Notes under the pieces: model-generated
Seen by the model: only the letters and a program-made list of their open reading frames with translations
Database searches by the model: none
What the model was told of the DNA's origin: nothing
Shown here: in pieces, positions 42,836 through 64,000 of the stretch
How the letters are laid out: each line of letters begins with the position of its first letter
Numbering within the stretch: the stretch's first letter is position 1
Made by a program: the position numbers and the translations under genes
Virus record (IMG/VR): IMGVR_UViG_3300027985_000843
Coordinates: 186,001 to 250,000 of that record
Length of the DNA: 64,000 nucleotides
Direction: 5' to 3' (one strand)

Positions 42836-44079
42836 TACTCTTCTCCCAGGTGCAAGCAGTGATCTGCCGTGATGTCTTGCGAGCAGGTCGGGCACATGCC
42901 CATCGCCCGAAACTCGTCGAGGACCGCCTTCTCCTGTTCGACTGTCTCCTGAAGCTCCGCGTCCAGCCTGGCTTGTTCCTCTTGGAGATGAGTTCGACGC
43001 GTCCAGAGCGAGTCCAGATGCTCGTAACGCCCACGCGCCTCCTCGACAGATGTCTTGTCAGGCACAGGCTTCGCCTGGGCGGCCTTGATGCGGGACATGC
43101 TATCCTTGAAGGTCCGCAGACGCTGAATCCACCCCTCGGCCGCCTTGGCCTTCGCGTATGCCGCCCGTAGAGGGTCGGAGTCCAGCTCCCGCACCGACTT
43201 GATGCCTCGGAGCTTTCGAATCTCCGGGGCCAAGGCACGGACACGCTGCAACAGGTCGTCCGCCTTAGCTGCCCGTACGTGCATCGCACGGACATCTGAG
43301 GTGTCCGGTACCGAGGGCTTCGTAGCGGCCTTCAGAGACTGGATAGAGAGCAGGACACGGCTCAAGGTCTTCCGGTACCTGTCCAGCCTCAAGACGCGTT
43401 CCTGGGCCGTCTCTATCGCTTCGTAGCGAGCTTCGATGTCGGACCCTCGACTCACCACGCCATCGAGGCCGGCGTACCGCTCCAAGTCCTTGTCGAGGCT
43501 GCTGATGTCCTTCTCTCGAATCTTCCGTGTGCTGGCCGCCGCCTTGCGGTCCTTCGAAGCTAGAGACACGGCCTTATTGATTTCGTCGAGGTTCGCGACG
43601 TCACTCAGAACATCAGCGATCGTGGTGCCACCCTGGTTCAGGAGAAAGATGGGCTCGAACTGTTCAGCCACCTGAATCAGATCTCGGTGGTCCCCGATCT
43701 TGACCGGCTCGAACAACGGCAAGAGAAAGTCAGGCGCCCCCCGATTCACGGCACTGTAGACGTCAGGATTCTCGGCCCCGTCCTTCCAAACCGTGTATTG
43801 GTTGACAGCGTCACCCTTCTCCCACAGCACACGCATGGCGGGAAAGTGAATGTCGACGGACGCGAAGCACTTGCACTTCTTTTTGCCCTGAGTGCGGCGA
43901 GGGCAGTCCGAAGCGTGACGAACGAAGTCGGTGCCGGAGGCCCCCGTCAGACAACATCGAAGTGCCCGCACGATGGCGCTCTTGCCGACGTTTGATCGCC
44001 CAACAAGTGCCGCGAATCCGTCGACCTTCAGCTTCGTCCGCTTGATCGACTGGAAGTTCTGGATCTCGAACTCAATCAT
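42835..44079 (-). CDS. SbcC/Rad50-like ATPase, N-terminal half ending in a zinc hook
   Basis: IQNFQSI, Walker A GRSNVGKS, QVAEQ (Q-loop) and a coiled coil ending in CPTC. Start moved to MIEFEI. Confidence 0.88.
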   Translation of the reverse strand: MIEFEIQNFQSIKRTKLKVDGFAALVGRSNVGKSAIVRALRCCLTGASGTDFVRHASDCPRRTQGKKKCKCFASVDIHFPAMRVLWEKGDAVNQYTVWKDGAENPDVYSAVNRGAPDFLLPLFEPVKIGDHRDLIQVAEQFEPIFLLNQGGTTIADVLSDVANLDEINKAVSLASKDRKAAASTRKIREKDISSLDKDLERYAGLDGVVSRGSDIEARYEAIETAQERVLRLDRYRKTLSRVLLSIQSLKAATKPSVPDTSDVRAMHVRAAKADDLLQRVRALAPEIRKLRGIKSVRELDSDPLRAAYAKAKAAEGWIQRLRTFKDSMSRIKAAQAKPVPDKTSVEEARGRYEHLDSLWTRRTHLQEEQARLDAELQETVEQEKAVLDEFRAMGMCPTCSQDITADHCLHLGEE

Positions 44080-45487
44080 CGCTGGGTTCGGCGGGAGCCT
44101 CTTCGCCACCGTCGCTCTCAGAGTCGCCGCCGCTCTCGGGGTCATCACCTTCGTCGGTGCCCTCTTCATCCTCGAAGCCGTCGGGGAGATCGATGGTCAT
44201 CTCCTCGGGGTCGACCTCCTCCTCATCGACCATGTTCGAATAGTCCTCCGAGTCTTCCTCTTCGCCGAACTCCTTGCGAGCCATGACGTCAAGGCTGTCC
44301 CCGTCCTCTTCTTCGTCCATGGGAACCTCACGGACTTCCGCGTCTAGGGCCTTGAGGACATCGTCCTTGATCTTCTGGAAGACAATCGGATTGCCCTTGA
44401 GCCACTGACGAAACGCCTCTCGCCCCCGCACCTCCGTGTCACCGTAGGAGTGGAAGCCGCCCGATCGCTTTTTGACAATCTTGGCCGACACGGCAGCGGC
44501 GATCACTGAGTAGAACTCGTCGATTCCGTAGCCGTACCGAATGAACAGCTCAGCCTCCTGGCCTTGACGCGAATCCATCTTGTTCTTGATGATCTTCGCG
44601 ACGGTGTGCGTGCCGAAGGGGATCTTCTTTCTCTTGCCTGTGAGGGGGTCGATCCTCTCGATGGACTCGACCGTCTTCTTGTACAGGTTGATGCGGACCG
44701 AGGCGTAGTATTTCAGGGCCTTGCCGCCGGCCGTATTGCTGCCGCCCTTGCCGCCGCCGATGGAACTACGCTCCTGGTTGATGCAGATCAGAGCCGTGCC
44801 CTTCGCGTTCCGCTTCTTGGCGTTCGGGTCATGCATCCACGAGTTGACGAGCCGCTTGAGCAAGGTGGAGAGACGCTTGGCCTGGATCCCCACGATGTCC
44901 TCATCGTCGATGTCTCGCTCCAGCTCCTTCTTCGGAGTCATGGCGGCCACGGAATCGACCACGATGAGATCAATGCCGCCCATGATGCCGAAGAACATCA
45001 TTTTGAAGCCCTCCTCAAGGGTTCGAGGACCGTAAAGCAGGAGCTTGGACGGGCTGAAGTCGACACCGATCGACTTCGCGTACTTGTGATCGATCGCCTG
45101 TTCGAAGTCCAAGAACATGGCGGTACCGCCTTGCTTCTGGACCTCGGCCACAGCTTGGAGTGCCGTAGTGGTCTTGCCCGACCCAGCAGCCCCAAAGATC
45201 TCAGTGACCCTACGTCTGGGGTAACCAGGGCACACCCTTCCCTTACCGTCGAGAGTGAGGGAGCCGCCGATGGTATGGTCGATGAAGATGTTGCCCGAAG
45301 GCACGCAGGGCGTCGGAGTGTTGTAGGACGCCTTGATAGGCTTTTCGCCGGTATCCTTGAGGATGGATGCCTGGATGACCGCCATCAGTCCCACGGGCTT
45401 GTCTCCCTTGGCAGACTTCTTCGTGGCTTTCTTGGCAGGTGCTTTTGCGGCCGCCTTCTTTGAAGGGGCCTTCTTGGTATCAGCCAT
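44072..45487 (-). CDS. recA: RecA-family recombinase
   Basis: VTEIFGAAGSGKTT, FLDFEQAID, VVDSVA, INQER and GGKALKYYASVR. Confidence 0.95.
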   Translation of the reverse strand: MADTKKAPSKKAAAKAPAKKATKKSAKGDKPVGLMAVIQASILKDTGEKPIKASYNTPTPCVPSGNIFIDHTIGGSLTLDGKGRVCPGYPRRRVTEIFGAAGSGKTTTALQAVAEVQKQGGTAMFLDFEQAIDHKYAKSIGVDFSPSKLLLYGPRTLEEGFKMMFFGIMGGIDLIVVDSVAAMTPKKELERDIDDEDIVGIQAKRLSTLLKRLVNSWMHDPNAKKRNAKGTALICINQERSSIGGGKGGSNTAGGKALKYYASVRINLYKKTVESIERIDPLTGKRKKIPFGTHTVAKIIKNKMDSRQGQEAELFIRYGYGIDEFYSVIAAAVSAKIVKKRSGGFHSYGDTEVRGREAFRQWLKGNPIVFQKIKDDVLKALDAEVREVPMDEEEDGDSLDVMARKEFGEEEDSEDYSNMVDEEEVDPEEMTIDLPDGFEDEEGTDEGDDPESGGDSESDGGEEAPAEPSDD

Positions 45488-48687: not shown

Positions 48688-50841
48688 CTACACCGTTACC
48701 AGCTGCCGAAGGACGGTATTTCGCTGAATGACTCGGTTGTTGTCGATGGCCTTTTGGATCGCTGTCGAGCTGCCGATCAACCACACAGACTTACGAGCAC
48801 GAGTCACGGCGGTGTACAGCAAGTTCCGCTGAAGCATCCGACCTTGGCTCATCGTCACCGGCAAGATGATGTGGTTGAACTCACTGCCCTGCGATTTGTG
48901 CACGCTGATGGCGTAGGCCAGGCGGAGCTTCTCTTCCGCAGCATGGTAAGTGAAAGACACCTCTGTGTCTAGGTCACCCTCGCCAATACCGTGAACGCGA
49001 ACGAACAGGTTCTCGCGATCGATCCCTACCAGCTTCCCCATGTCTCCGTTGTACACACCGAGTTCGTAGTCATTCTGTACAACCATCACACGGTCGCCCA
49101 CGCGAAAGTGCTGGTTTCCCTGCTTCCACTCCTTGGGGCCGCTTGGATTGAGCTTGTCTCGAAGATGGTCGTTGAGGGTGTTGACCCCCACCCGACCCTC
49201 GTACTTGGGACTGAGAACCTGGAAGTTGTCGTTGCGATCCTTGAGTTTCACCGCCATCGCGACGATCAAAGCAAGGATGCGATCCTCGTCGTCCATGGAC
49301 ACGAAGTGGAATTCTGTCTTCTCTTTTGGCCCCTGGAGGGTGGGCATCTCGCCCCGGTTGATCCGGTGAGAGTTGGCGACGATCTCTCCCTTCTCAGACT
49401 GCCTGAAAATCTGGGTCAGCCTCACGTGAGGAACGCCATCACAGGCGACCAGCTCCCGCAGGACATTCCCTGGCCCTACTGACGGAAGCTGGGCGTCGTC
49501 ACCGACGAAGACAAGGTAGGTGTCGGGCCGGAGTGCCGACAGGAGCCGATAGAACAGCTCTTGGTCCACCATGCTCATCTCGTCGATGATGACCGCATCG
49601 ACGACATACCGACTGTCTGCGTTGTACCCCCAGGAGTTCCCATCGTACCGAAGGGCGCGGTGGATGGTGGAAGCCGGATGGCCTGTCACGGACGATAGCC
49701 GCTTGGCTGCGATCCCTGTGGGGGCCATGAGAGTGAACGAAGCCCCGGTCGTCTCGAACAAGCGAACGATGGCCCTCACGGCAGTCGTCTTGCCTGTGCC
49801 GGGGAGACCCGTGAGCACAAGCACGCGGTTGTTGCTCAGCGTATCGACGGCCTGTCGCTGAGCCTCCGACAGGGTCATCCGGTTGGACTTCTCGTATTCA
49901 GCAATGAAGGTGCCGACATCGATGCGGAGGTCGTTGGCTTCTTCGGCCAGAGCCGCTCGAAGACAGGCCGCCGCCTCCCTCTCGTACATGTAGAGGTCGT
50001 CCAGATAAATCCCCACCTCGTCTTCCAGCTTCACGCTCTTGGACTCCACAAGGGTCTTGATGGCCTCGCGGTAGTCGCCTCGCGGGGGAATCAGGTTGTA
50101 GCTGGAGAAGACGGCCGGCACGACCTCTTTGAGTTCGCCTCTGCGCAGGAACAGGTGCCCCTGCTTGGAACTCTCGCGAAGAGCCAACAGAATCCCGCCC
50201 TGGACCCTCTCGGGTGACCCAAGGTTGAACCCTAGCTTCAATGCGAGCTTGTCGACCCTCGCGAAGTCGTTCATGACCTCCAGAAGACGGTAGGGGTTGT
50301 TCTTGAGGATGGTCGCTGCGTTCTCCCCGAACCGGCCCATGGCTAGCTGGATCTCAACACCATGGATGCCGCCCTCTTGAAGTAGCATCGACAGGTCCCT
50401 CGTAGACAGTGCCCGTTCCCACCCCAGAATGGCCTCTTGAACGGCCTCAGGGTCCCCAATGGGTGGTTGGGCCTCCAACAGCTCGTTCGGGCGTTCTGAG
50501 AGCGTACGGAAGACGCTGGGACCGTTCGCGCTGATGCCCCGAAGCACGTCGGAGTTGTTGAAGCCTGGGATGCAGTTCCACAAGAACTGTCGGACCTCTT
50601 GAGGGTAGCGGGCCCACGGCTCCCAGTTGCGGATGGCGAACTGCTTACCGTATTTGTTGTGCTTCGCCCATTTGCCGATAAACCTGATGGTCACGCCGGT
50701 CACGAGACGAGACAGCCCGAAGACATTGCCCTTCGCCGTGATGTTACCCATCTCTTCCGAAAACAAGGCGAGGATGTAGAAGTCGCCGCTCTGGAAGATG
50801 ACCTTGTCAACCTTCCCTTCGATCGTCACCAATTCTGCCAT
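48688..50841 (-). CDS. recD2: RecD2-type SF1B helicase
   Basis: N-terminal OB and HhH region, GLPGTGKTT, APTGIAA, DEMSM, GDDAQL, SVHKSQGSEF and LYTAVTR. Confidence 0.93.
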   Translation of the reverse strand: MAELVTIEGKVDKVIFQSGDFYILALFSEEMGNITAKGNVFGLSRLVTGVTIRFIGKWAKHNKYGKQFAIRNWEPWARYPQEVRQFLWNCIPGFNNSDVLRGISANGPSVFRTLSERPNELLEAQPPIGDPEAVQEAILGWERALSTRDLSMLLQEGGIHGVEIQLAMGRFGENAATILKNNPYRLLEVMNDFARVDKLALKLGFNLGSPERVQGGILLALRESSKQGHLFLRRGELKEVVPAVFSSYNLIPPRGDYREAIKTLVESKSVKLEDEVGIYLDDLYMYEREAAACLRAALAEEANDLRIDVGTFIAEYEKSNRMTLSEAQRQAVDTLSNNRVLVLTGLPGTGKTTAVRAIVRLFETTGASFTLMAPTGIAAKRLSSVTGHPASTIHRALRYDGNSWGYNADSRYVVDAVIIDEMSMVDQELFYRLLSALRPDTYLVFVGDDAQLPSVGPGNVLRELVACDGVPHVRLTQIFRQSEKGEIVANSHRINRGEMPTLQGPKEKTEFHFVSMDDEDRILALIVAMAVKLKDRNDNFQVLSPKYEGRVGVNTLNDHLRDKLNPSGPKEWKQGNQHFRVGDRVMVVQNDYELGVYNGDMGKLVGIDRENLFVRVHGIGEGDLDTEVSFTYHAAEEKLRLAYAISVHKSQGSEFNHIILPVTMSQGRMLQRNLLYTAVTRARKSVWLIGSSTAIQKAIDNNRVIQRNTVLRQLVTV

Positions 50842-52781
50842 CAGAGCTTCCCAACCATCCCCAGGAAGTTTTCCTCGGAGATGCATTCGGTGTTGTTCTT
50901 GCGGGCCGCCTTCGCCTTGGAGGACGTCGAGTCAGGGTCGGCCATGACGAGATAAGTCAGTCCTTTGACCACGCTCTTCTTCACAGTGCCGCCCGCCTCC
51001 TCCGCCAACCGGATGAGGTCTGTTCGTTTCATGTTTGAAGTCCCTGTGAAGCACACGGTCTTACCTGTGAGAGCCCCTACCGAGCGCTCCTTGACACCAA
51101 CCAGGCCAACAAGATCATCCAACATGTCCCCGTGACGAGCCAGCCACTTCGTGAGCGACTGGGCCCGCTTGGGACCTACTCCTGGGATGTTCGTCAGCTC
51201 TTGCAGGGTCGCAGCCTTGAACCTGCCCACGCTGTCGTAGCCTGCATCTACGAGCAGACGCATCGTGCTCGTGGCACACAACGGAACGGCCAGGGCACCC
51301 ATGAGCTGTTCCAAGGGCAACGGGGTCACAGCCCACAACTGGTCAACAGCCTTCTTTGCAGACGCAACGCCCATTCGATCCAAGTCCTGTACCTGCTCCA
51401 CCTTGAGTCGATACAGGTCTGGCACCGAGTTGACCAAGCCCTCAGCCACAACCTTCGAGACGAGGGTGGGGCCCCACTCCAGGATGCCCAGCTCGTGGAC
51501 CCACTGCCGGATACGGCCTTCTACCTGTGCCGGGCACTCGCCCGTGTTCGGGCAGATGACGAACTCCCCACTTCTTTCCGTGGGGGCGCCGCACTCAGGA
51601 CAGTGGGTGGGCGGCTGGGAGGTCTGGCCCGTCCCCTCGACCACGGAAGCCACACGGGGGATGACGTCGTTGGACCGGCCTACGAGCACGCGGCACCCGA
51701 CATCGAACCCGATCTGCTCGATATACCTCTGGTTGTAGAGCGACGCTCGACTCACCTCCGCCCCAAGAAGCCGCACCGGCTTGAATTCGGCCACGGGTGT
51801 GATGATGCCGGTACCACCCACCTGATCGATGCGAGCGGTGACGACCGTCTCCCTCGTGACCATGTTGAACTTGAATGCGATGGCACCAAGAGGACGGTCG
51901 TTCTTCTCCCCGAGACTTAGCTGGTGGGCCATGTCATTGATCCGGACCACAAGCCCGTCGATCTCATAGGGCAGGGTCTCACGGGTGTCCTTCTGGTACT
52001 GTTCCCAGATGTCTTGGGGCGCCATGACGCCAGGGACGGCAACCGACGGAGTGGTGATGCCAGAGGCGGCCGACAGGTAATACTTGGGCGTGCTGAGGCC
52101 CATCTCCTGGAGGAACTCGAACTGTTGTTTCTCCGTTTCGAAGTCGAGCCCATCGAGCACCTGGTACACCAAGACGGTGAGATGCTCAGAACCCACACCG
52201 TCGAGGCGTTTAGCAATGCCACTCGCGGCATTCCGGGGGTTCTGCATGGTCGGGAAGTGCTCGATCAGGTCGTCCTTGTACAGGAGAATCTCCCCCCGGA
52301 ATTCAGCCGTGATAGGGGCCTTCAGTGTGGGTAGCACGCACTTCATTCGAGCCACGTTCGGCGTGATGTCCTCCCCCAACTGGCCGTCACCTCTGGTGAG
52401 CCCCTGGGTAAACTTCCCGTTCTCGTACCGAAGGGAAACGCTGATGCCGTCCAGCTTCTCCGTCACCAGCAGCCACTCACACTTCTCGCTAGGGCGTGAG
52501 ACAGCCCGAACCCACGCCGCCATCTCGTCTGGGGTCTGTACCTTGGACAAGGACCCCATGGGGATGAGATGGCGGACCTTCGGCCAATCCGACACAGGAG
52601 GGGCGCCCACCGCAGTCACGACCGGATGGTCCTCTCTCAATTCGGCAAGCTCGTCCACCCACGCGTCGTAAACGTCGTCAGGAACACTCGGCTGATCGTT
52701 GTAGTAGTCGTGTCGAGCCTGAGCGACTTTGGCCTCAAGCTCCTCGACACGTTCTTGGTCAAGCTGGTCGAAGAGATCCAT
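50841..52781 (-). CDS. ligA: NAD-dependent DNA ligase
   Basis: KLDG, TRGDG, RGE, DGLV, C4 zinc finger and a C-terminal BRCT domain. Confidence 0.96.
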   Translation of the reverse strand: MDLFDQLDQERVEELEAKVAQARHDYYNDQPSVPDDVYDAWVDELAELREDHPVVTAVGAPPVSDWPKVRHLIPMGSLSKVQTPDEMAAWVRAVSRPSEKCEWLLVTEKLDGISVSLRYENGKFTQGLTRGDGQLGEDITPNVARMKCVLPTLKAPITAEFRGEILLYKDDLIEHFPTMQNPRNAASGIAKRLDGVGSEHLTVLVYQVLDGLDFETEKQQFEFLQEMGLSTPKYYLSAASGITTPSVAVPGVMAPQDIWEQYQKDTRETLPYEIDGLVVRINDMAHQLSLGEKNDRPLGAIAFKFNMVTRETVVTARIDQVGGTGIITPVAEFKPVRLLGAEVSRASLYNQRYIEQIGFDVGCRVLVGRSNDVIPRVASVVEGTGQTSQPPTHCPECGAPTERSGEFVICPNTGECPAQVEGRIRQWVHELGILEWGPTLVSKVVAEGLVNSVPDLYRLKVEQVQDLDRMGVASAKKAVDQLWAVTPLPLEQLMGALAVPLCATSTMRLLVDAGYDSVGRFKAATLQELTNIPGVGPKRAQSLTKWLARHGDMLDDLVGLVGVKERSVGALTGKTVCFTGTSNMKRTDLIRLAEEAGGTVKKSVVKGLTYLVMADPDSTSSKAKAARKNNTECISEENFLGMVGKL

Positions 52782-52822: not shown

Positions 52823-54781
52823 TCAACGGATTGGACAGACTCCGCTAGAGCATTCTTCGATCTCCATGTCGCCGCCTCGGGTGAGTCGGCTTTCATGATT
52901 GATGGTGCGGGCCATCTCTTTGTAGGTGTTCTCGTCGATGGCCTCATAGGGAGGCTGTTGGTACCCGTGGGTTTTGGGCATCACCGACGTCGACTTGAGG
53001 CGAGGCACAAACTCCTTCAGGCAGGAAGCGAGTTCTTTCCGCTCCGTCTTGGCGTCGAAGTTGATGGTGCTCGACACGGCATTGTCAGCCCACCACTCCT
53101 GGATGGCCGCCTGACGCTCGAACTGGTCTCTGAGGGACTCCGTTTCCTTGGTGACGCGCGGGTCCACAGCCTTCATCGGGAACGAGAACACCCACGTGTT
53201 GCCGGTGCTGTCGTAGCTGTCATCCTCGTACGTCACCCCGGCCTCGGCCATGGCAACCGACATGGGGTCGTTCTTCGCGATGCGGATGCGACGAATGTAG
53301 TAGGGGGAATGGGAAGCGTGGACACCAGGACTGGACCCATTGAGAAGCGATATGGTGCCCGACGGCTTCACGGTCGTGACCGTGATCGGCTTGTTGACTC
53401 CCAACTCTTCGGCGTAGGCATCAGCCTCTCGACGACATGCACCAAACCACTTGGCGAGCAACTCGGGGGTCCACTCGAAGTCGCAGATCCCTCCCAGCCC
53501 GACACCAATCCGCATGTTGCGGCGACCCACTGCCTGGCTCTGAGGATCTGACAGCGGCGTGAGACGCTGACGCAGACAGTAGCGGGTCACGAGACGGAAC
53601 ACAGTGATAGGATCGGTACCCGCCTCGAACTTGGCCGGGAACACCTCCGCCAGATTGCATGCCTCACGGTCATGCAGGAGCTGCTCGCCGCAAGGATTGA
53701 CGCCCTGTGCATTCGGGTCGGTCTGCCGGCCAAGAGGGAGGTTCAGGATCCCAGGCTCGCCGTATTCGATGTTGTCGTCCACCAACTCGTCCCAGTCGAA
53801 GTTGTTCAGCTGGTCCCAGCTCTGAAAGGCGATCGAGTTGTTGGAAGTGTGGCGGTGGCTCATCACAGCGGCCGCGTCCTTCTTGGCATCGCGGAAACCG
53901 TGATCGGTAGCACGCCCCAACGCAATCAAGGCGGACCGTCGAACGTTGCCCGCCTTGATGCACAGACCGATGTGGTTCGTGATGTCGAGAGCTTCCACCG
54001 ACGTGAGCTGGCGACCACTCGCTTGGCGCACGAAGCCCCACGAGGATCTGAGGAGATGCGTGAGCGGGCCCGGACCACAAGCTGTGCCGCCGAACGTCTT
54101 GATGGGCTCGCCTCTGGCTCTGACCTTCGAGACGTCGATGATCAAGTCCTTGCCTGAAAAGGCGTATTCCAGCACGCTCCGGAGGGATGACACCCAGCCC
54201 TCGCGGGAGTCTTCGCAGACGTGTATGGGGGTCTGACCGTTCAGGAACTCGGGGCCGTTGGGCTTGACCTCACCGTGATTCGGGTGGTCACCCCGGCATC
54301 TGACTGCAAACCGGGCCGGGCGATCAGAGACATTCGGAAGATCGTTGATCTCCGTCAAGCCCACGCCCACACCGCCTCCGAGCATGAGCTGGTTTGCAGT
54401 CCAGCACCAGTCGTCGATCCCGTGCAGGGTCGTGTACCAGCAGTTGAATCGAGCATCGGAGGGGATGCCGTCAACACCGCCCGTCCAAAGACCACGGCCC
54501 GGGGGCAAAGCCTGCCCGGTCCAGAACAAGTGGAACAGGAGCTGCGCCTCGTCCATGCTCACGCCCGGAGCGAGGTTCGCGTTGCCCTCCACCACTCGCT
54601 TGATGGTGTCGGTCCAGCTCTCCCCGCCGCCGTCTCTGGAGTATTTGGTGAGGTACGTCGACCTCGCCAGAAGGGATCCAAAGACGTCGCCCTTTTCACG
54701 ATAAGGAGCGAGAAAGCTTTCACTGAGTCTAATTTGAGACAGGTGGCGTGTTTCGACGATCTCCATCAGGGGTTCCCTCAC
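52823..54781 (-). CDS. nrdJ: Class II (adenosylcobalamin) ribonucleotide reductase, monomeric type
   Basis: PPGRGLW, FNC, GNVRRSA, NPCGE, TTVKPSGT and C-terminal CSSGVCP. No nrdB is present. Confidence 0.92.
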   Translation of the reverse strand: MREPLMEIVETRHLSQIRLSESFLAPYREKGDVFGSLLARSTYLTKYSRDGGGESWTDTIKRVVEGNANLAPGVSMDEAQLLFHLFWTGQALPPGRGLWTGGVDGIPSDARFNCWYTTLHGIDDWCWTANQLMLGGGVGVGLTEINDLPNVSDRPARFAVRCRGDHPNHGEVKPNGPEFLNGQTPIHVCEDSREGWVSSLRSVLEYAFSGKDLIIDVSKVRARGEPIKTFGGTACGPGPLTHLLRSSWGFVRQASGRQLTSVEALDITNHIGLCIKAGNVRRSALIALGRATDHGFRDAKKDAAAVMSHRHTSNNSIAFQSWDQLNNFDWDELVDDNIEYGEPGILNLPLGRQTDPNAQGVNPCGEQLLHDREACNLAEVFPAKFEAGTDPITVFRLVTRYCLRQRLTPLSDPQSQAVGRRNMRIGVGLGGICDFEWTPELLAKWFGACRREADAYAEELGVNKPITVTTVKPSGTISLLNGSSPGVHASHSPYYIRRIRIAKNDPMSVAMAEAGVTYEDDSYDSTGNTWVFSFPMKAVDPRVTKETESLRDQFERQAAIQEWWADNAVSSTINFDAKTERKELASCLKEFVPRLKSTSVMPKTHGYQQPPYEAIDENTYKEMARTINHESRLTRGGDMEIEECSSGVCPIR

Positions 54782-58319: not shown

Positions 58320-60397
<2,078 letters not shown>

Positions 60398-60873: not shown

Positions 60874-61461
60874 TCACGCGACGCGGAGGAAGGGAGCCCA
60901 CTCTTCGGGGGCCTGACGGGGATCGATTCTCGGACCGCACATGGGCAGAGTCTTCGGTTGTACCGGGACAGACAGCAGCTGCATCCCAGCCTCTTCCGGC
61001 GTGCGGTTCGCCTTATGGCTGTTGCAAGCAGTACAGGCCATCACAATGTTGTCCCACACAGTCTTGCCGCCCTTGCCACGAGGTACGACGTGTTCGTACT
61101 CCAGCTGGCTCATGGGCAGCACCGTGCCGCAATACTGACACGAGAAGTTGTCGCGCAGGCAGACGTTGAGCTTGCTGAACTTCACCCCGGACTTGACGGA
61201 TCGCACCTTCCGACGAAGGACGGCCACAGCCGGCACCTTGATCGTCAGGGACTCGGTGTCCGTTCCGATGACCTGCCGAAGAGCCCGACGCAACTCGGGG
61301 AACTCTCGGAGGTGATTGGGTCCGACGACGGTCACGATCTCGTCGTACTGAACGAGAACCTCGACCGTGCCACGGAACATTCGGGTGATGGCATCTTTCC
61401 AGTCCACAATCTCGTGGGGGATGTATGCCTTCGTAAGGATCAAAGTCTGCGTGAACGACAT
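60874..61461 (-). CDS. HNH endonuclease (McrA-like)
   Basis: RDNFSCQYCG..EYEHVVPRGKGG..NIVMACTACNSHK. Start moved to MSFTQT. Confidence 0.9.
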   Translation of the reverse strand: MSFTQTLILTKAYIPHEIVDWKDAITRMFRGTVEVLVQYDEIVTVVGPNHLREFPELRRALRQVIGTDTESLTIKVPAVAVLRRKVRSVKSGVKFSKLNVCLRDNFSCQYCGTVLPMSQLEYEHVVPRGKGGKTVWDNIVMACTACNSHKANRTPEEAGMQLLSVPVQPKTLPMCGPRIDPRQAPEEWAPFLRVA

Positions 61462-61524
61462 GGTAGTTACCGTTTCTTTCTCACGACTGTCTCCATAGAC
61501 GCAAGAGCTTCTCGCGTCTGACCT

Positions 61525-61553
61525 ATGAAAAAGCCCCCGACTCTCGGAGGCTT
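61525..61553 (-). terminator. Intrinsic terminator directly after the tmRNA
   Basis: Minus strand AAGCCTCCGA-GAG-TCGGGGGCTT, then TTT. Confidence 0.8.
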
Positions 61554-61919
61554 TGGTGGAGATGTGGGGAATCGAACCCCAGTCCAAGACAGCTTCAAAG
61601 TCGTCTCGCTCGCGTGCGTAGCTGGTCTACCCTTCCAGCAGGGTCACTGGCCTTTCAACCAGCATGCGGGTATTCACATTAATCTCATCCGGTGGGCATC
61701 GGACCCCTTGCAGTTTTTCACCGGACCAGCTCGTGTGGTTTACACCTCGGGGGTACTCGAACTCCTCCCCCTTCGATGGCCTGTCTCTACCTAAGCAGCG
61801 ACGGGCATTGCAGAATTGTCATTCGCAATTGTGTTCTGTCTGGTTCTTCAAGGGGGGCCTGACAAACCCCCTGCACGATCAACGTCCTCTCCACTACCCT
61901 GTCGAAACCGATCATCCCC
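61554..61919 (-). ncRNA. ssrA: tmRNA, 366 nt, tag (A)ANDNSAMPVAA
   Basis: 5' GGGGATGATCGGTTTCGAC and 3' GGGGTTCGATTCCCCACATCTCCACCA. The tag frame 61826-61791 reads gcg aat gac aat tct gca atg ccc gtc gct gct tag. Confidence 0.95.
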
Positions 61920-61964
61920 AGAGGATACGGCCATTGTAGACCCCCGAAGGGGGCGGACCGTACC

Positions 61965-62051
61965 TGGTGCTCAGGGAGGGACTTGAACCCTCACGTCCAC
62001 AAGGGACAACAGTTTTTGAAACTGCCGCGTCTGCCATTTCGCCACCTGAGC
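61965..62051 (-). tRNA. tRNA-Leu(CAA)
   Basis: Cloverleaf with anticodon loop TTCAAAA, long variable arm and encoded CCA. Confidence 0.93.
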
Positions 62052-62139
62052 AAATGTCCGCCGACCGAAGTGCCGGCAGACTGGGGGCCAAGTTTCCCTG
62101 GCACCTTCCACCACTTCCTGACCCGAGGGTCGGGGAAGA

Positions 62140-62370
62140 TCAGAACCTTATATCATGAACCCTACACCACTCGGCATAGTTGACCCACACAAATCGGTCA
62201 TGCTTGCAGTTCGGGCATGGCCTCTTGCTGGGCCTGGACCGCCATGTGTGGCCGCAGCTACAGCACTTGTAGACAGCACAACCACTGCACTGACATTCCG
62301 TACGCCACGAGCCGGACCCGGGGAACCCTTCCTCGACGGTCGTTCTCGTGATTGTCCTGCGCTTATTCAC
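62140..62370 (-). CDS. Small Zn-finger protein starting at tRNA position 76
   Basis: CCSCGH..CPNC..VWVNY. The GTG start follows the CC of the tRNA 3' end. Confidence 0.55.
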   Translation of the reverse strand: MNKRRTITRTTVEEGFPGSGSWRTECQCSGCAVYKCCSCGHTWRSRPSKRPCPNCKHDRFVWVNYAEWCRVHDIRF

Positions 62371-62446
62371 GGTGCGTCCCCCCGGATTTGAACCGAGACA
62401 CGCCCAGTTATGAGCTGGGGGCTCTGACCTATTGAGCTAGGGACGC
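62371..62446 (-). tRNA. tRNA with CAT anticodon (elongator Met or Ile2)
   Basis: Cloverleaf with loop CTCATAA and G1:C72. It lacks the three consecutive G:C anticodon-stem pairs of an initiator. The 3' end reads ACCG rather than ACCA. Confidence 0.88.
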
Positions 62447-62646: not shown

Positions 62647-62865
62647 TCAGTCGAGCGGTACCCCCTCCAGCGTCCTGTGGATGGTCCGTATGGCCCACCC
62701 CACCGCATCTTTCAAGGGGACTCGATGGAACTCCTTGCCACACTCCGTACACTGACGGAAAAACTCTCTCGTCTTGAGGTCGACATGATTCCACAAGACG
62801 CCCTTACATCCCGGGTCCTCACAAGGAGGGCCTACGGGCTCGAACTGGGGGATATTTGTTGTCAT
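62647..62865 (-). CDS. Small Zn-ribbon protein whose ATG shares the A of the tRNA CCA
   Basis: MTTNIP..CEDPGC..CTECG. Confidence 0.6.
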   Translation of the reverse strand: MTTNIPQFEPVGPPCEDPGCKGVLWNHVDLKTREFFRQCTECGKEFHRVPLKDAVGWAIRTIHRTLEGVPLD

Positions 62866-62951
62866 GGTGGCCCTCCCGGGACTCGAACCCGGACACCCAC
62901 GAGGGGTAGCGGGGTTTAAGCCCGCCGCGTCTGCCATTTCACCAGAGAGCC
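62865..62951 (-). tRNA. tRNA-Leu(TAA)
   Basis: Cloverleaf with loop CTTAAAC, long variable arm and CCA. Confidence 0.93.
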
Positions 62952-62952
62952 G

Positions 62953-63028
62953 TGGTAGCCGGTGCGAGGATCGAACTCGCCTAGAACTGCTTGTAAAACA
63001 GCCACCGTCGCCAGACGGTTCACCGGCC
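62953..63028 (-). tRNA. tRNA-Val(TAC) with atypical D arm
   Basis: 7-bp acceptor stem, 5-bp T stem, loop TTTACAA, A73 and CCA. D arm is ACCGTC-TGGC-GACGGT. Confidence 0.8.
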
Positions 63029-63550
63029 GTGAAGCACCTCCTGCACCCACAAGGTGTTGAGGCGGAGAATCTCCTCCCCGATGCGACGATTGATCTCTCG
63101 GTGGGCCTCGTACATACGGGGCGTAAACTTCCTGTATCGCAAGTGATCCATAGCGGTGCAATCATTCTTGACCCTAGCCCACCCCCACTTGGCGTCAACC
63201 TTCTGACCCCACAACAGAAGAGGCACCGCTTCATACCCGTCGTAGACGTAGTACGGGACGGGTTCGGGGATGCCCTTGAACGCCCGTCGACGGCCAATTT
63301 TACGGGCGATCCACCGAACGACGCAGAAGCCATACTCGCGATCCCGGCCACCAGCTCCATACTCGAAGCCGATACGGCACTTCCCACGGTCGTACACCAG
63401 CTCCTTCTCGGTGAGAGGGCCGTGGATGCCGGAGGTCTCCCAGCTCAAGCCCATGAAGGTGTGAAAGGGTCGGTAGTTCAGGCTCAAGAACTCGACCATC
63501 CTGGCCTGAGCCTTGCGACTCCGGCAGGGCACTGCGATGGCGTAGCCCAT
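63020..63550 (-). CDS. Hypothetical protein (176 aa) with its stop codon inside tRNA-Val
   Basis: Starts 1 nt after the upstream stop. The TGA is at tRNA nt 7-9. Confidence 0.65.
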   Translation of the reverse strand: MGYAIAVPCRSRKAQARMVEFLSLNYRPFHTFMGLSWETSGIHGPLTEKELVYDRGKCRIGFEYGAGGRDREYGFCVVRWIARKIGRRRAFKGIPEPVPYYVYDGYEAVPLLLWGQKVDAKWGWARVKNDCTAMDHLRYRKFTPRMYEAHREINRRIGEEILRLNTLWVQEVLHGR

Positions 63551-63551
63551 G

Positions 63552-63830
63552 CTAGTCCTCGTTCAAGGTGCCCTTGTTGAGGATCAAAAGGCTCATAATC
63601 ACGAACCCCTCTTCAAGACCAGGGAACTCCCCGTGCTTCAAGAGGTGCGTCACCTTCGCGACCACATGTCGACCGGTGAACTTCTTCGTGATGGGGTTCC
63701 ATTCATGCAGGTCCAACAGAGACCCGACCTCGAAGCCACGGTCATCCTTCCGCAGCTCGTAGGTCTTGATACCGTCCCAGACAGCCATGAAAGCCGAGGG
63801 CCATGTCTTGAGCCTATGTAGCTTCTGCAT
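63552..63830 (-). CDS. DUF3850/ASCH-like (PUA-fold) protein
   Basis: HRLKTWP..F..V..G.KTYELRKDDRGFEVG..L.L.EW..TGR. TGGTGTA lies 10 nt upstream of the ATG. Confidence 0.8.
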   Translation of the reverse strand: MQKLHRLKTWPSAFMAVWDGIKTYELRKDDRGFEVGSLLDLHEWNPITKKFTGRHVVAKVTHLLKHGEFPGLEEGFVIMSLLILNKGTLNED

Positions 63831-63840
63831 GACCCTAAGA

Positions 63841-63847
63841 TACACCA
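63841..63847 (-). promoter_or_regulatory. TGGTGTA element 10 nt before ATG 63830
   Basis: Recurring motif with the same spacing. Confidence 0.6.
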
Positions 63848-63848
63848 C

Positions 63849-63935
63849 TGGTCGGCACGGGGGGAATTGAACCCCCACGGTCGCGAGGACCACCAGGGCC
63901 TAAACCTGGCGCGGCTGCCATTACGCCACGTGCCG
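63849..63935 (-). tRNA. tRNA-Leu(TAG)
   Basis: Cloverleaf with loop TTTAGGC, long variable arm and CCA. Confidence 0.92.
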
Positions 63936-64000
63936 GTGCACGGCGCGGGAATCGAACCCGCCTATGCCATCGCGTGAAGATGGTGCCCTCCCAGAGTGCT
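63936..64000 (-). tRNA. tRNA-Val(CAC), partial (5' end beyond the window), atypical D arm
   Basis: Anticodon arm CCATC-TTCACGC-GATGG, T arm GCGGG-TTCGATT-CCCGC and A73. Confidence 0.75.

What the first reader, a model, noticed from the sequence alone, without database searches (positions are those of the whole stretch)
62953..64000. Two tRNA-Val genes with a tRNA-Sec-like D arm on an otherwise canonical body
Seen: tRNA-Val(TAC) has G8 instead of U8, U14 and C15 instead of A14 and a purine, a D stem extendable to 6 bp with a 4-nt loop (ACCGTC-TGGC-GACGGT), and G48. The partial tRNA-Val(CAC) has the same TCTGG D region (GCACTC-TGG-GAGGGC) and a variable loop ending in TAG. Established: an extended D stem with G8, U14-A21 and C15-G20a is characteristic of bacterial tRNA-Sec. 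These tRNAs instead have 7/5 stems, a short variable loop, and Val determinants A35, C36 and A73. Inference: this is a remodelled tRNA core, possibly evading host tRNA-cleaving defence nucleases or serving a non-translational role.
Basis: partly seen in the sequence, partly recalled or inferred. Interest (0 to 1): 0.6.

Follow-up and report, generated by a model that had tools for sequence, protein, structure and literature searches.

The report
Phage valine tRNAs with selenocysteine-type core
Two valine tRNA genes of a 372-kb phage are ordinary in outline but hold their fold together with the inner contacts otherwise known from bacterial selenocysteine tRNA. The same design recurs in many large phages and horizontally spread tRNA arrays, where standard gene finders often miss it.

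Summary
tRNA-Val(UAC) lies at 62953-63028 (-). The 3' 65 nt of tRNA-Val(CAC) lie at 63937-64000 (-). Both have a 7/5 acceptor/T arm, a 5-nt variable loop, A35, C36 and A73. Both also carry U14, C15, G20a(G20), A21 and G48, so the D stem extends to six pairs.

This matches the bacterial tRNA-Sec core, where C15:G20a:G48 is invariant (PMC3711452). It is not a quirk of this phage. Pattern scans found 70 distinct tRNA-Val genes with the same core:
- in about 30 viral contigs, many of 290-460 kb, with locus GC of 36-67%;
- in 43 loci of bacterial MAGs, mostly Polyangia, nearly all inside dense tRNA arrays.

Compensatory changes preserve the cloverleaf: 99% of cells pair, and 20 of 23 pairs show changes on both sides. 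The same core occurs in Asp, His, Glu, Gln and CAU tRNAs, including two cultured phages.

Best reading: working elongator tRNAs of a mobile (phage plus array) tRNA lineage with an alternative tertiary core. Whether the host's own tRNA-Val shares the core could not be checked. I found no published description.

The parts
62953..63028 (-). tRNA-Val(UAC), 73 nt plus encoded CCA. It has G1.U72, G8, U14, C15, G20a, A21, G26.U44, G48 and A73. The anticodon is at 62995-62993.
   Evidence: Sequence; parse; cloverleaf MFE. Rfam tRNA-Sec scores 34.9 bits. ARAGORN misfolds it. It is a member of alignment A1.
63004..63019 (-). Extended D arm of Val(UAC): a 6-bp stem (ACCGUC/GACGGU) with the 4-nt loop UGGC. 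The pairs U14:A21 and C15:G20a are the two extra pairs.
   Evidence: Searches recover the hairpin. RNAalifold predicts the same six pairs on 52 relatives.
62981..62985 (-). Variable loop UCUAG of Val(UAC), ending in A47 G48. G48 is the third member of the Sec-type C15:G20a:G48 triple.
   Evidence: A47 is present in 51/52 relatives without being imposed by the search pattern. G48 was imposed for Val, but it co-varies with C15 in tRNAs that were not selected.
63937..64000 (-). tRNA-Val(CAC), positions 9-73, cut by the window end (full gene: L001 2570-2641 -). It has U8, U14, C15, G20, A21, G48, A73 and an A12.G23 mismatch. It is followed by CC, and the second C is also base 1 of tRNA-Leu(UAG).
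   Evidence: (RF00005, 40.1 bits).
63849..63935 (-). tRNA-Leu(UAG), canonical class II, directly downstream of Val(CAC).
62865..62951 (-). tRNA-Leu(UAA), canonical, starting one base after the CCA of Val(UAC).
63020..63550 (-). 176-aa ORF with no Pfam family. Its UGA stop codon is U7-G8-A9 of tRNA-Val(UAC).
   Evidence: coordinates.
63552..63830 (-). 92-aa DUF3850 (ASCH-like) ORF lying between the tRNA genes.
   Evidence: PF12961, 2.5e-23.
61554..62446 (-). Rest of the cluster on the same strand: tRNA-Met(CAU) 62371-62446, tRNA-Leu(CAA) 61965-62051, and a tmRNA at 61554-61919 (tag ANDNSAMPVAA). A hairpin plus U-run follows the tmRNA.
   Evidence: tmRNA 114.5 bits.
60874..61587 (-). HNH endonuclease ORF just downstream of the tmRNA. 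Homing endonucleases of this kind are typical neighbours of phage and L-array tRNA clusters.
   Evidence: PMC8421152.

Best explanation
Both genes most likely encode working elongator tRNA-Val that read GUA/GUG (UAC) and GUG (CAC) during infection.

They are probably cut out of a long same-strand transcript that also carries small ORFs, other tRNAs and a tmRNA. They are probably charged by the host ValRS through A35, C36 and A73.

Their L-shape is held by a different tertiary core. The canonical contacts are U8:A14 (reverse Hoogsteen) and the R15:Y48 Levitt pair. Here U14 pairs with A21 and C15 pairs with G20a, which lengthens the D stem to six pairs. G48, and the base at position 8, then dock on those pairs as in bacterial tRNA-Sec. 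G18, G19 and the T loop stay canonical.

This core is the inherited mark of a mobile tRNA lineage. That lineage is shared by large phages and by horizontally spread long tRNA arrays (L-arrays), mainly in Polyangia.

What is shown: the sequence states, the covariation and the distribution. What is inferred: the base triples (by analogy with the tRNA-Sec crystal structure), charging by ValRS, and use in translation.

Why the lineage keeps this core is open. My guess is a fold that is self-sufficient and less dependent on host modifications: no G46 in most members, no U8 in a quarter, and a longer D stem.
For: 1. Cloverleaf under selection. In 52 distinct relatives, 99% of cells pair, 20 of 23 pairs show changes on both sides, and 0 of 500 shuffles reach this. 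RNAalifold predicts the 6-bp D stem on its own.

2. G20a was not fixed by the first patterns, yet C15:G20a holds in 51/52. A47 is 51/52 and A73 is universal.

3. Among 727 unselected non-Val tRNAs, U14+C15 goes with G20x+A21+G48 (odds ratio 64, p = 3e-18). The members are Asp 11, His 3, Glu 2 and Asn 1.

4. The tRNA-Sec crystal structure shows exactly these triples (PMC3711452). A real tRNA-Sec (L021) has the same UC-UGGU-GA apex.

5. Distribution. There are 70 distinct Val genes, in about 30 viral contigs with locus GC of 0.36-0.67 and in 43 MAG loci. Of those loci, 36 are Myxococcota, and nearly all sit in arrays of up to 32 tRNAs per 8 kb. L-arrays are known elements spread by horizontal transfer (PMC8421152).

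6. Cultured phages carry the core in other isotypes: a KVP40-like tRNA(CAU) and a tRNA-Gln in cyanophage BUCT-ZZ01.

7. FelixO1-like phages of Pectobacterium and E. coli have tRNA-Val with A14-U15...A47-G48 and G1.U72 or A1-U72. E. coli valT has A14, G15, C48 and G1-C72. No E. coli genome holds anything similar to the phage gene.

8. GUG plus GUA make up 44% of the Val codons in the window's ORFs.
Against: - There are no expression, charging or structure data.
- U14, C15, A21 and G48 were imposed by my search patterns for the Val set, so their invariance there is not independent evidence. The independent evidence is the set of unselected isotypes and G20a.
- 14:21 and 15:20a never vary within the Val family, so covariation does not prove these two pairs.
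- The 7-nt D-loop variant, as in Val(CAC), leaves only a 3-nt loop if C15:G20 forms.
Host mimicry is therefore not excluded for this phage.
- The window's two genes are only about 70% identical to their nearest relatives.
Confidence: 0.7

Rival explanations
1. Host mimicry. The phage's host lineage, perhaps Polyangia, uses this core in its ordinary housekeeping tRNA-Val, and the phage simply copied host genes.
For: Of the 43 bacterial loci with the same tRNA-Val, 36 are Myxococcota MAGs. Some lie in chromosomal surroundings: Ser/Thr kinases in L029 and L107, glycosyl hydrolase and transferases in L025, and a 9.07-Mb chromosome in L030. The phage's GC of 59% is close to that of several of those loci.
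Against: - Nearly all bacterial hits sit in dense arrays of odd tRNAs (4-32 per 8 kb), not in dispersed housekeeping positions.
- No cultured isolate among 185,579 species representatives matched.
- The same design occurs in viral contigs with locus GC from 36% to 67% and in cultured Vibrio and Synechococcus phages.
- The E. coli host tRNA-Val is canonical, while a coliphage tRNA-Val is not.
- The nearest array genes are only about 70% identical to the window's genes.
Confidence: 0.12
2. Self/non-self marking. The altered core lets phage tRNAs escape host enzymes that read the canonical core. Alternatively, it lets them survive a phage-driven attack on host tRNAs. It would thereby act as a counter-defence.
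For: The core is concentrated in phages and mobile arrays and differs from host tRNAs where a host is known. Phage tRNAs are known to counter tRNA-cleaving defences (PMC10264068, PMC11555353). G8 in 16 of 70 members removes the s4U8 site, and G46 is rare.
Against: All documented cases act through the anticodon loop or arm, not the core. I know of no nuclease that reads positions 8/14/15/48. The trait is limited to a few isotypes (Val, Asp, His and some others) within the same clusters, whose other tRNAs are canonical. The bacterial arrays that carry it are not phages.
Confidence: 0.15
3. Not a tRNA in function. It could be a decayed pseudo-tRNA, a transcription terminator for the 176-aa ORF, or an attachment-site remnant.
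For: ARAGORN and Rfam at gathering threshold fail on Val(UAC). A consensus scan flags the D hairpin plus the U-run of the anticodon loop as terminator-like. The ORF's stop codon lies inside the gene.
Against: All four stems are perfect, the T loop is canonical, G18 and G19 are present, CCA is encoded, and the MFE fold is a cloverleaf. Seventy relatives keep every stem through compensatory changes. The terminator count equals the shuffle expectation.
Confidence: 0.04
4. A tRNA-Sec or allo-tRNA derivative used for recoding: Ser or Sec inserted at Val codons, or an 8/4 fold.
For: The best Rfam model is tRNA-Sec. G8 could pair with C65 to give an 8/4 arrangement in Val(UAC).
Against: There is no long extra arm, which SerRS needs, and the discriminator is A73, not G73. 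The anticodon is UAC or CAC. G8:N65 can pair in only 3 of the 7 other G8 members checked, so 8/4 is not conserved. Val(CAC) has U8.
Confidence: 0.02

Closest known systems
Bacterial tRNA-Sec (selC; Aquifex aeolicus structure, PMC3711452)
   Same: A 6-bp D stem with a 4-nt loop. C15:G20a plus G48, which is invariant in bacterial tRNA-Sec. A 14:21 pair contacted by base 8. The apex UC-UGGU-GA is identical to that of the real tRNA-Sec in L021.
   Different: The acceptor/T arm is 7/5, not 8/5. The variable loop is 5 nt instead of a long extra arm. The anticodon is UAC or CAC, not UCA. The discriminator is A73, not G73. The 6-bp anticodon stem is not a family trait.
Canonical bacterial tRNA-Val (E. 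coli valT)
   Same: Length, 7/5 arms, 5-nt variable loop, A35, C36, A73, A37, G18 G19, and the T loop UUCGAUC.
   Different: valT has U8, A14, G15, C48 and G1-C72. The phage genes have G8 or U8, U14, C15, G20a and G48, G1.U72 in Val(UAC) (Val(CAC) has G1-C72), and no G46.
[quoted passage not shown]
   Same: Dense same-strand clusters of supernumerary tRNAs, spread by horizontal transfer and often next to homing endonucleases. The window has an HNH gene beside the cluster.
   Different: In the passages I searched, two of those papers (PMC8421152, PMC4758250) do not mention a Sec-type core and PMC4758250 does not mention Myxococcota arrays; PMC5966550 was listed but not read.
allo-tRNAs (PMC5389517; review PMC7609411)
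   Same: Non-Sec tRNAs with Sec-like traits, found in metagenomes and in some phages.
   Different: allo-tRNAs are 8/4 or 9/3, with long extra arms and serine identity. The tRNAs here are 7/5 class I with valine identity.
Phage tRNAs that resist anticodon nucleases (PMC10264068, PMC11555353)
   Same: Phage-encoded isoacceptors that differ from the host's at positions that matter to host enzymes.
   Different: Those differences lie in the anticodon loop, and the effect has been shown by experiment. Here the difference is in the tertiary core, and no effect is known.

Membership tests
Elongator tRNA-Val (class I) | Cloverleaf with a 7-bp acceptor stem, 5-bp T stem, 5-bp anticodon stem and a short variable loop | tested here: met
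   The family alignment shows 99% of cells paired.
Elongator tRNA-Val (class I) | Valine identity bases A35, C36 and A73 | tested here: met
   Both genes have them. All ARAGORN-called Val tRNAs in the fetched loci have A73.
Elongator tRNA-Val (class I) | Canonical core: U8:A14 and an R15:Y48 Levitt pair | tested here: not met
   The genes have G8 or U8, U14, C15 and G48. Compare E. coli valT.
Elongator tRNA-Val (class I) | Charged by ValRS and used on the ribosome | not testable with these tools
   This needs tRNA sequencing or aminoacylation assays.
Bacterial tRNA-Sec | 6-bp D stem with a 4-nt loop; C15:G20a:G48 | tested here: met
Bacterial tRNA-Sec | 13-bp acceptor/T branch (8/5) | tested here: not met
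   The arms are 7/5. The optional G8:C65 pair is not conserved among relatives.
Bacterial tRNA-Sec | Long extra arm, UCA anticodon and G73 | tested here: not met
   The variable loop is 5 nt, the anticodons are UAC and CAC, and the discriminator is A73. Rfam gives 34.9 bits against a cut-off of 47.
allo-tRNA | 8/4 or 9/3 acceptor branch with a long extra arm | tested here: not met
   PMC5389517 abstract.
Phage / L-array tRNA cluster | Many same-strand tRNA genes at high density, supernumerary, with mobile-element neighbours | tested here: met
   L002 holds 9 canonical ARAGORN tRNAs, the misfolded Val(UAC) and a tmRNA within 5.5 kb, plus one weak CAU tRNA-like match (Rfam, 23.7 bits). An HNH gene lies next to the cluster.

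The most novel reading that the evidence does not exclude
Phages and horizontally moving tRNA arrays maintain a parallel stock of elongator tRNAs built on the tRNA-Sec tertiary core: Val and Asp above all, also His, Glu, Gln and CAU. This structural signature would be functional. It would make mobile-element tRNAs distinguishable from host tRNAs, so that they escape host enzymes that read the canonical core. Alternatively, they would be spared by phage-directed destruction of host tRNAs.
Probability: 0.15. Interest if true: 0.85.

Novelty: new variant of a known kind. Interest (0 to 1): 0.6.

Why it matters
U8:A14 and R15:Y48 are treated as near-universal in bacterial elongator tRNAs, and the Sec-type D arm is treated as a hallmark of tRNA-Sec. 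A natural, widespread family of 7/5 class-I tRNAs that uses the Sec core matters in three ways.

First, the two cores would be interchangeable in ordinary translation. That is of interest for tRNA structure and for designing orthogonal tRNAs.

Second, it links jumbo-phage tRNA clusters to bacterial L-arrays, and it gives a sequence signature for tracing that mobile tRNA pool.

Third, it exposes an annotation gap. ARAGORN and Rfam at gathering threshold miss or misfold such genes. Examples are Val(UAC) in this window and an unannotated tRNA-Gln in a cultured cyanophage. Phage tRNA counts and codon-compensation analyses may therefore be biased.

Tried and rejected
- BLAST of Val(UAC) and of the 2.5-kb region against 50,697 cultured phage records found nothing that covers the D arm. 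Two family members searched against 72,556 plasmids gave no match.
- Relatives of the neighbouring 176-aa ORF: only one other viral contig (L003), and it has no tRNAs nearby.
- An 8/4 Sec-like fold (the Rfam alignment) is rejected, because G8:N65 is not conserved.
- A terminator reading of the D hairpin is rejected, because the hit count equals the shuffle expectation and the cloverleaf is conserved.
- A 6-bp anticodon stem (G26.U44) is present in Val(UAC) but is not a family trait.
- Recent transfer between this phage and the Polyangia arrays is not supported. The best identities are about 70% for the Val genes and only partial for the other tRNAs.
- A host housekeeping control was not obtainable. 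The absence of isolate hits is weak evidence, because the pattern also fixed the T loop.
- Literature searches for this core in elongator or phage tRNAs, and for tRNA arrays in Myxococcota, found nothing.

Full report
**Where we are.** The window is a stretch of a 371,739-bp viral contig, IMGVR_UViG_3300027985_000843. GC is 59%, and every plausible gene lies on the minus strand. Most of the window is a replication and recombination module: class II ribonucleotide reductase, NAD-dependent ligase, RecD2-type helicase, RecA, clamp-loader subunits, 5'-3' exonuclease and GroEL.

Its last 2.5 kb hold part of an RNA gene cluster. In transcription order, using the extension L002, the cluster reads:
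- Arg(UCG), Arg(CCG)
- a weak CAU tRNA-like element
- Gln(UUG), Val(CAC), Leu(UAG)
- a DUF3850 ORF and a 176-aa ORF
- Val(UAC), Leu(UAA), Met(CAU), Leu(CAA)
- a tmRNA, then an HNH endonuclease gene

.

- G8, U14, C15 and G48
- the hairpin ACCGUC-UGGC-GACGGU
- 7/5 arms and a five-base variable loop
- A35, C36 and A73, plus an encoded CCA

It also has a G1.U72 wobble. The UGA stop of the upstream 176-aa ORF is U7-G8-A9 of the tRNA.

tRNA-Val(CAC) is cut by the window end. Positions 9-73 are 64000-63937, and the full gene is in L001. It has U8, U14, C15, G20, A21 and G48, with an A12.G23 mismatch.

Standard tools stumble on Val(UAC). ARAGORN returns a 90-nt 'tRNA-???'. Rfam lists nothing at gathering threshold, and its best model at that site is tRNA-Sec at 34.9 bits against a cut-off of 47.

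**The comparison with tRNA-Sec is correct.** The crystal structure of Aquifex aeolicus tRNA-Sec has a six-pair D stem and a four-base loop. It has two base triples, G14:C21:U8 and C15:G20a:G48, sitting where canonical tRNAs have U8:A14 and R15:Y48. C15, G20a and G48 are invariant in bacterial tRNA-Sec (PMC3711452). A genuine tRNA-Sec that one of my scans fetched by chance (L021, 67.3 bits) has the D-arm apex UC-UGGU-GA and G48. That is letter for letter the consensus of the family described next.

**It is a family, not a one-off.**
- A pattern fixing UCUGG..A, the NAC anticodon, G48 and a UUCGAU T loop found the same architecture in other viral contigs of 116-427 kb, plus a register-shifted variant on a 455-kb contig.
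- The same pattern plus A73, run over one genome for each of 185,579 species, gave 103 stretches. About half of these are chance hits with no cloverleaf. 43 loci hold a tRNA-Val with a perfect acceptor stem, and nine more hold a tRNA-Val in a slightly shifted register.
- A relaxed T-loop pattern added 18 more distinct genes from some 20 further viral contigs. Their locus GC ranges from 0.36 to 0.67, and several contigs are 290-460 kb.

In all there are 70 distinct genes:
- Anticodons: UAC 53, CAC 15, GAC 2
- Base 8: U 48, G 16, C 4, A 2
- Positions 1:72: G.U in 40

. The window's genes are about 70% identical to their nearest relatives, so the family is old and diverse.

**The family is under selection as a tRNA.** On 52 distinct members, 99% of cells form standard pairs and 20 of 23 pairs show changes on both sides. 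No shuffle or slid register comes close. RNAalifold predicts the six-pair D stem unaided.

One caveat applies. U14, C15, A21 and G48 were imposed by the patterns, so their invariance in the Val set proves nothing. The independent evidence is:
- G20a, left free in the first patterns, pairs with C15 in 51/52.
- A47 is 51/52.
- Among 727 unselected non-Val class-I tRNAs from the same loci, C15 goes with G48 (odds ratio 17, p = 3e-18).
- In the same set, U14+C15 goes with G20x+A21+G48 (odds ratio 64). The carriers are Asp (11), His, Glu and Asn.

The five positions therefore behave as one module that replaces the canonical one.

**Where the bacterial copies sit.** Of the 43 bacterial loci, 36 are Myxococcota MAGs: Polyangiaceae, Labilithrix, Sandaracinaceae, Kofleriaceae and a Sorangium sp. 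The rest are Bryobacterales, Gemmataceae and a few others. None is a cultured isolate.

Almost all lie in dense tRNA arrays. I counted up to 32 tRNAs per 8 kb, and 868 ARAGORN calls in the first 118 loci. Many of these tRNAs are otherwise odd. Some arrays are clearly chromosomal: one lies on a 9.07-Mb chromosome, and others are flanked by Ser/Thr kinases or glycosyl hydrolases.

These match the 'L-arrays' of Santamaria-Gomez et al. (PMC8421152). Those are long, supernumerary tRNA operons spread by horizontal transfer, often beside homing endonucleases and also seen in phages. In the Anabaena L-array studied there, 23 functional tRNAs are induced under translational stress.

**Cultured phages.** Close relatives of the window's genes are absent from cultured phages, but the design is not:
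- A KVP40-like vibriophage has a tRNA(CAU) with U8, UCUGGUGA and G48. Its own Val and Asp tRNAs are canonical.
- Cyanophage BUCT-ZZ01 has an unannotated tRNA-Gln(UUG) with the same core, which ARAGORN misses.
- FelixO1-like phages of Pectobacterium and E. coli carry tRNA-Val with A14-U15...A47-G48 and G1.U72 or A1-U72. This looks like a half-way state.
- E. coli's own valT has U8, A14, G15, C48 and G1-C72. No E. coli genome contains anything similar to the coliphage gene.

Where the host is known, the trait therefore belongs to the phage and not to the host.

**Interpretation.** The most economical reading is that both genes are working valine tRNAs from a mobile tRNA lineage that uses the Sec-type core.
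- Shown: the sequence states, the structural covariation, and the distribution in phages and arrays.
- Inferred: the base triples (by analogy with tRNA-Sec), charging by ValRS, and ribosomal use. GUG and GUA make up 44% of the window's Val codons.

Why the core is kept is unknown. A fold that depends less on host modification is my guess: a longer D stem, no G46, and often no U8.

However, all documented cases of phage tRNAs escaping defence nucleases involve the anticodon loop or arm (PMC10264068, PMC11555353, PMC13056530). The core is also confined to a few isotypes within clusters whose other tRNAs are canonical.

Host mimicry is the main rival for this particular phage, and I could not test it directly.

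**Novelty.** Neither the 2020 review of non-canonical natural tRNAs (PMC7609411) nor the full-text searches turned up a 7/5 elongator tRNA with a Sec-type core. A term search of the 2015 array survey found no mention of Myxococcota (PMC4758250). I rate the finding a new variant of a known kind, of moderate to high interest. It also has a practical side: such genes are under-annotated.

Noticed in passing
L001 2724-2792 (-), about 90-160 nt beyond the window's right end: This is a tRNA-like gene with a CAU anticodon. It has a CGCGGUG/CAUCGCG acceptor stem, A73, CCA, a very small D arm and a UCCGAGU T loop. Rfam tRNA scores it at only 23.7 bits, and ARAGORN is silent. Twenty distinct 69-72-nt tRNA(CAU) genes with CGC..GCG-A ends and reduced D arms occur in the bacterial arrays.
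   Followed up: partly
L016-L118, e.g. L030 1-8000, L078, L032, L080: Polyangia and other Myxococcota MAGs carry long tRNA arrays, with up to 32 tRNAs in 8 kb. One lies on a 9.07-Mb chromosome, and some are flanked by Ser/Thr kinase genes. I found no paper that mentions tRNA arrays in Myxococcota.
   Followed up: partly
L031 467-541, L040 193-268, L145 4627-4703 (-), L147 1664-1740: tRNA-Leu genes with a short, class-I-type variable loop (74-77 nt) are common in the arrays and viral contigs. There were 41 distinct ones in the first 118 loci, and they also occur in cultured KVP40-like and FelixO1-like phages. The three Leu tRNAs of the window are normal class II.
   Followed up: no
L051, L028, L043, L091, L004 (Asn, Thr, Arg and Lys tRNAs): A second non-canonical core recurs: C8-A9 with G14:C21 and A15:U20, giving D loops such as GAUGGUC or GAAGGUC. 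These also form six-pair D stems, with a three-base loop.
   Followed up: no
L146 1494-1565 (+) (ON615601.1, Synechococcus phage BUCT-ZZ01): This is an unannotated tRNA-Gln(UUG) with U1.U72, G73 and the Sec-type core. ARAGORN misses it.
   Followed up: partly
L145 8537-8609 (-) (MN794232.1 180533-180608, KVP40-like vibriophage): This gene is annotated as tRNA-Met(CAU). It has the Sec-type core, U1.U72 and A73, and is 80% identical to a viral tRNA-Val(UAC). It may be a Val-family gene whose anticodon changed. A similar UGCG..CGCU-A tRNA(CAU) is in L140.
   Followed up: partly
L106 5312-6880 (+): A Ro60-like gene (TROVE plus vWA domains) lies inside or next to a Polyangiaceae tRNA array.
   Followed up: no
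window 61554-61919 (-) and 60874-61587 (-): The phage encodes a tmRNA (tag ANDNSAMPVAA, 114.5 bits). It closes the tRNA cluster and is followed by a hairpin plus U-run and an HNH endonuclease gene.
   Followed up: partly
window 63020-63022 (-): The UGA stop codon of the 176-aa ORF is formed by U7, G8 and A9 of tRNA-Val(UAC). G8-A9 also occurs in relatives that have no such ORF, so the overlap probably does not explain G8.
   Followed up: partly
L109 3382-3454 (-): ARAGORN calls this 'tRNA-SeC(tca)', inside a Sandaracinaceae array next to the family tRNA-Val. It is 73 nt with no extra arm, and it reads better as a CAU tRNA with a six-pair D stem (C14:G21, C15:G20a).
   Followed up: no
window 58320-59978 (-), 52823-54781 (-), 50841-52781 (-), 44072-45487 (-): The phage carries its own GroEL-type chaperonin, class II ribonucleotide reductase, NAD-dependent DNA ligase and RecA. 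This is in keeping with a very large phage genome.
   Followed up: no
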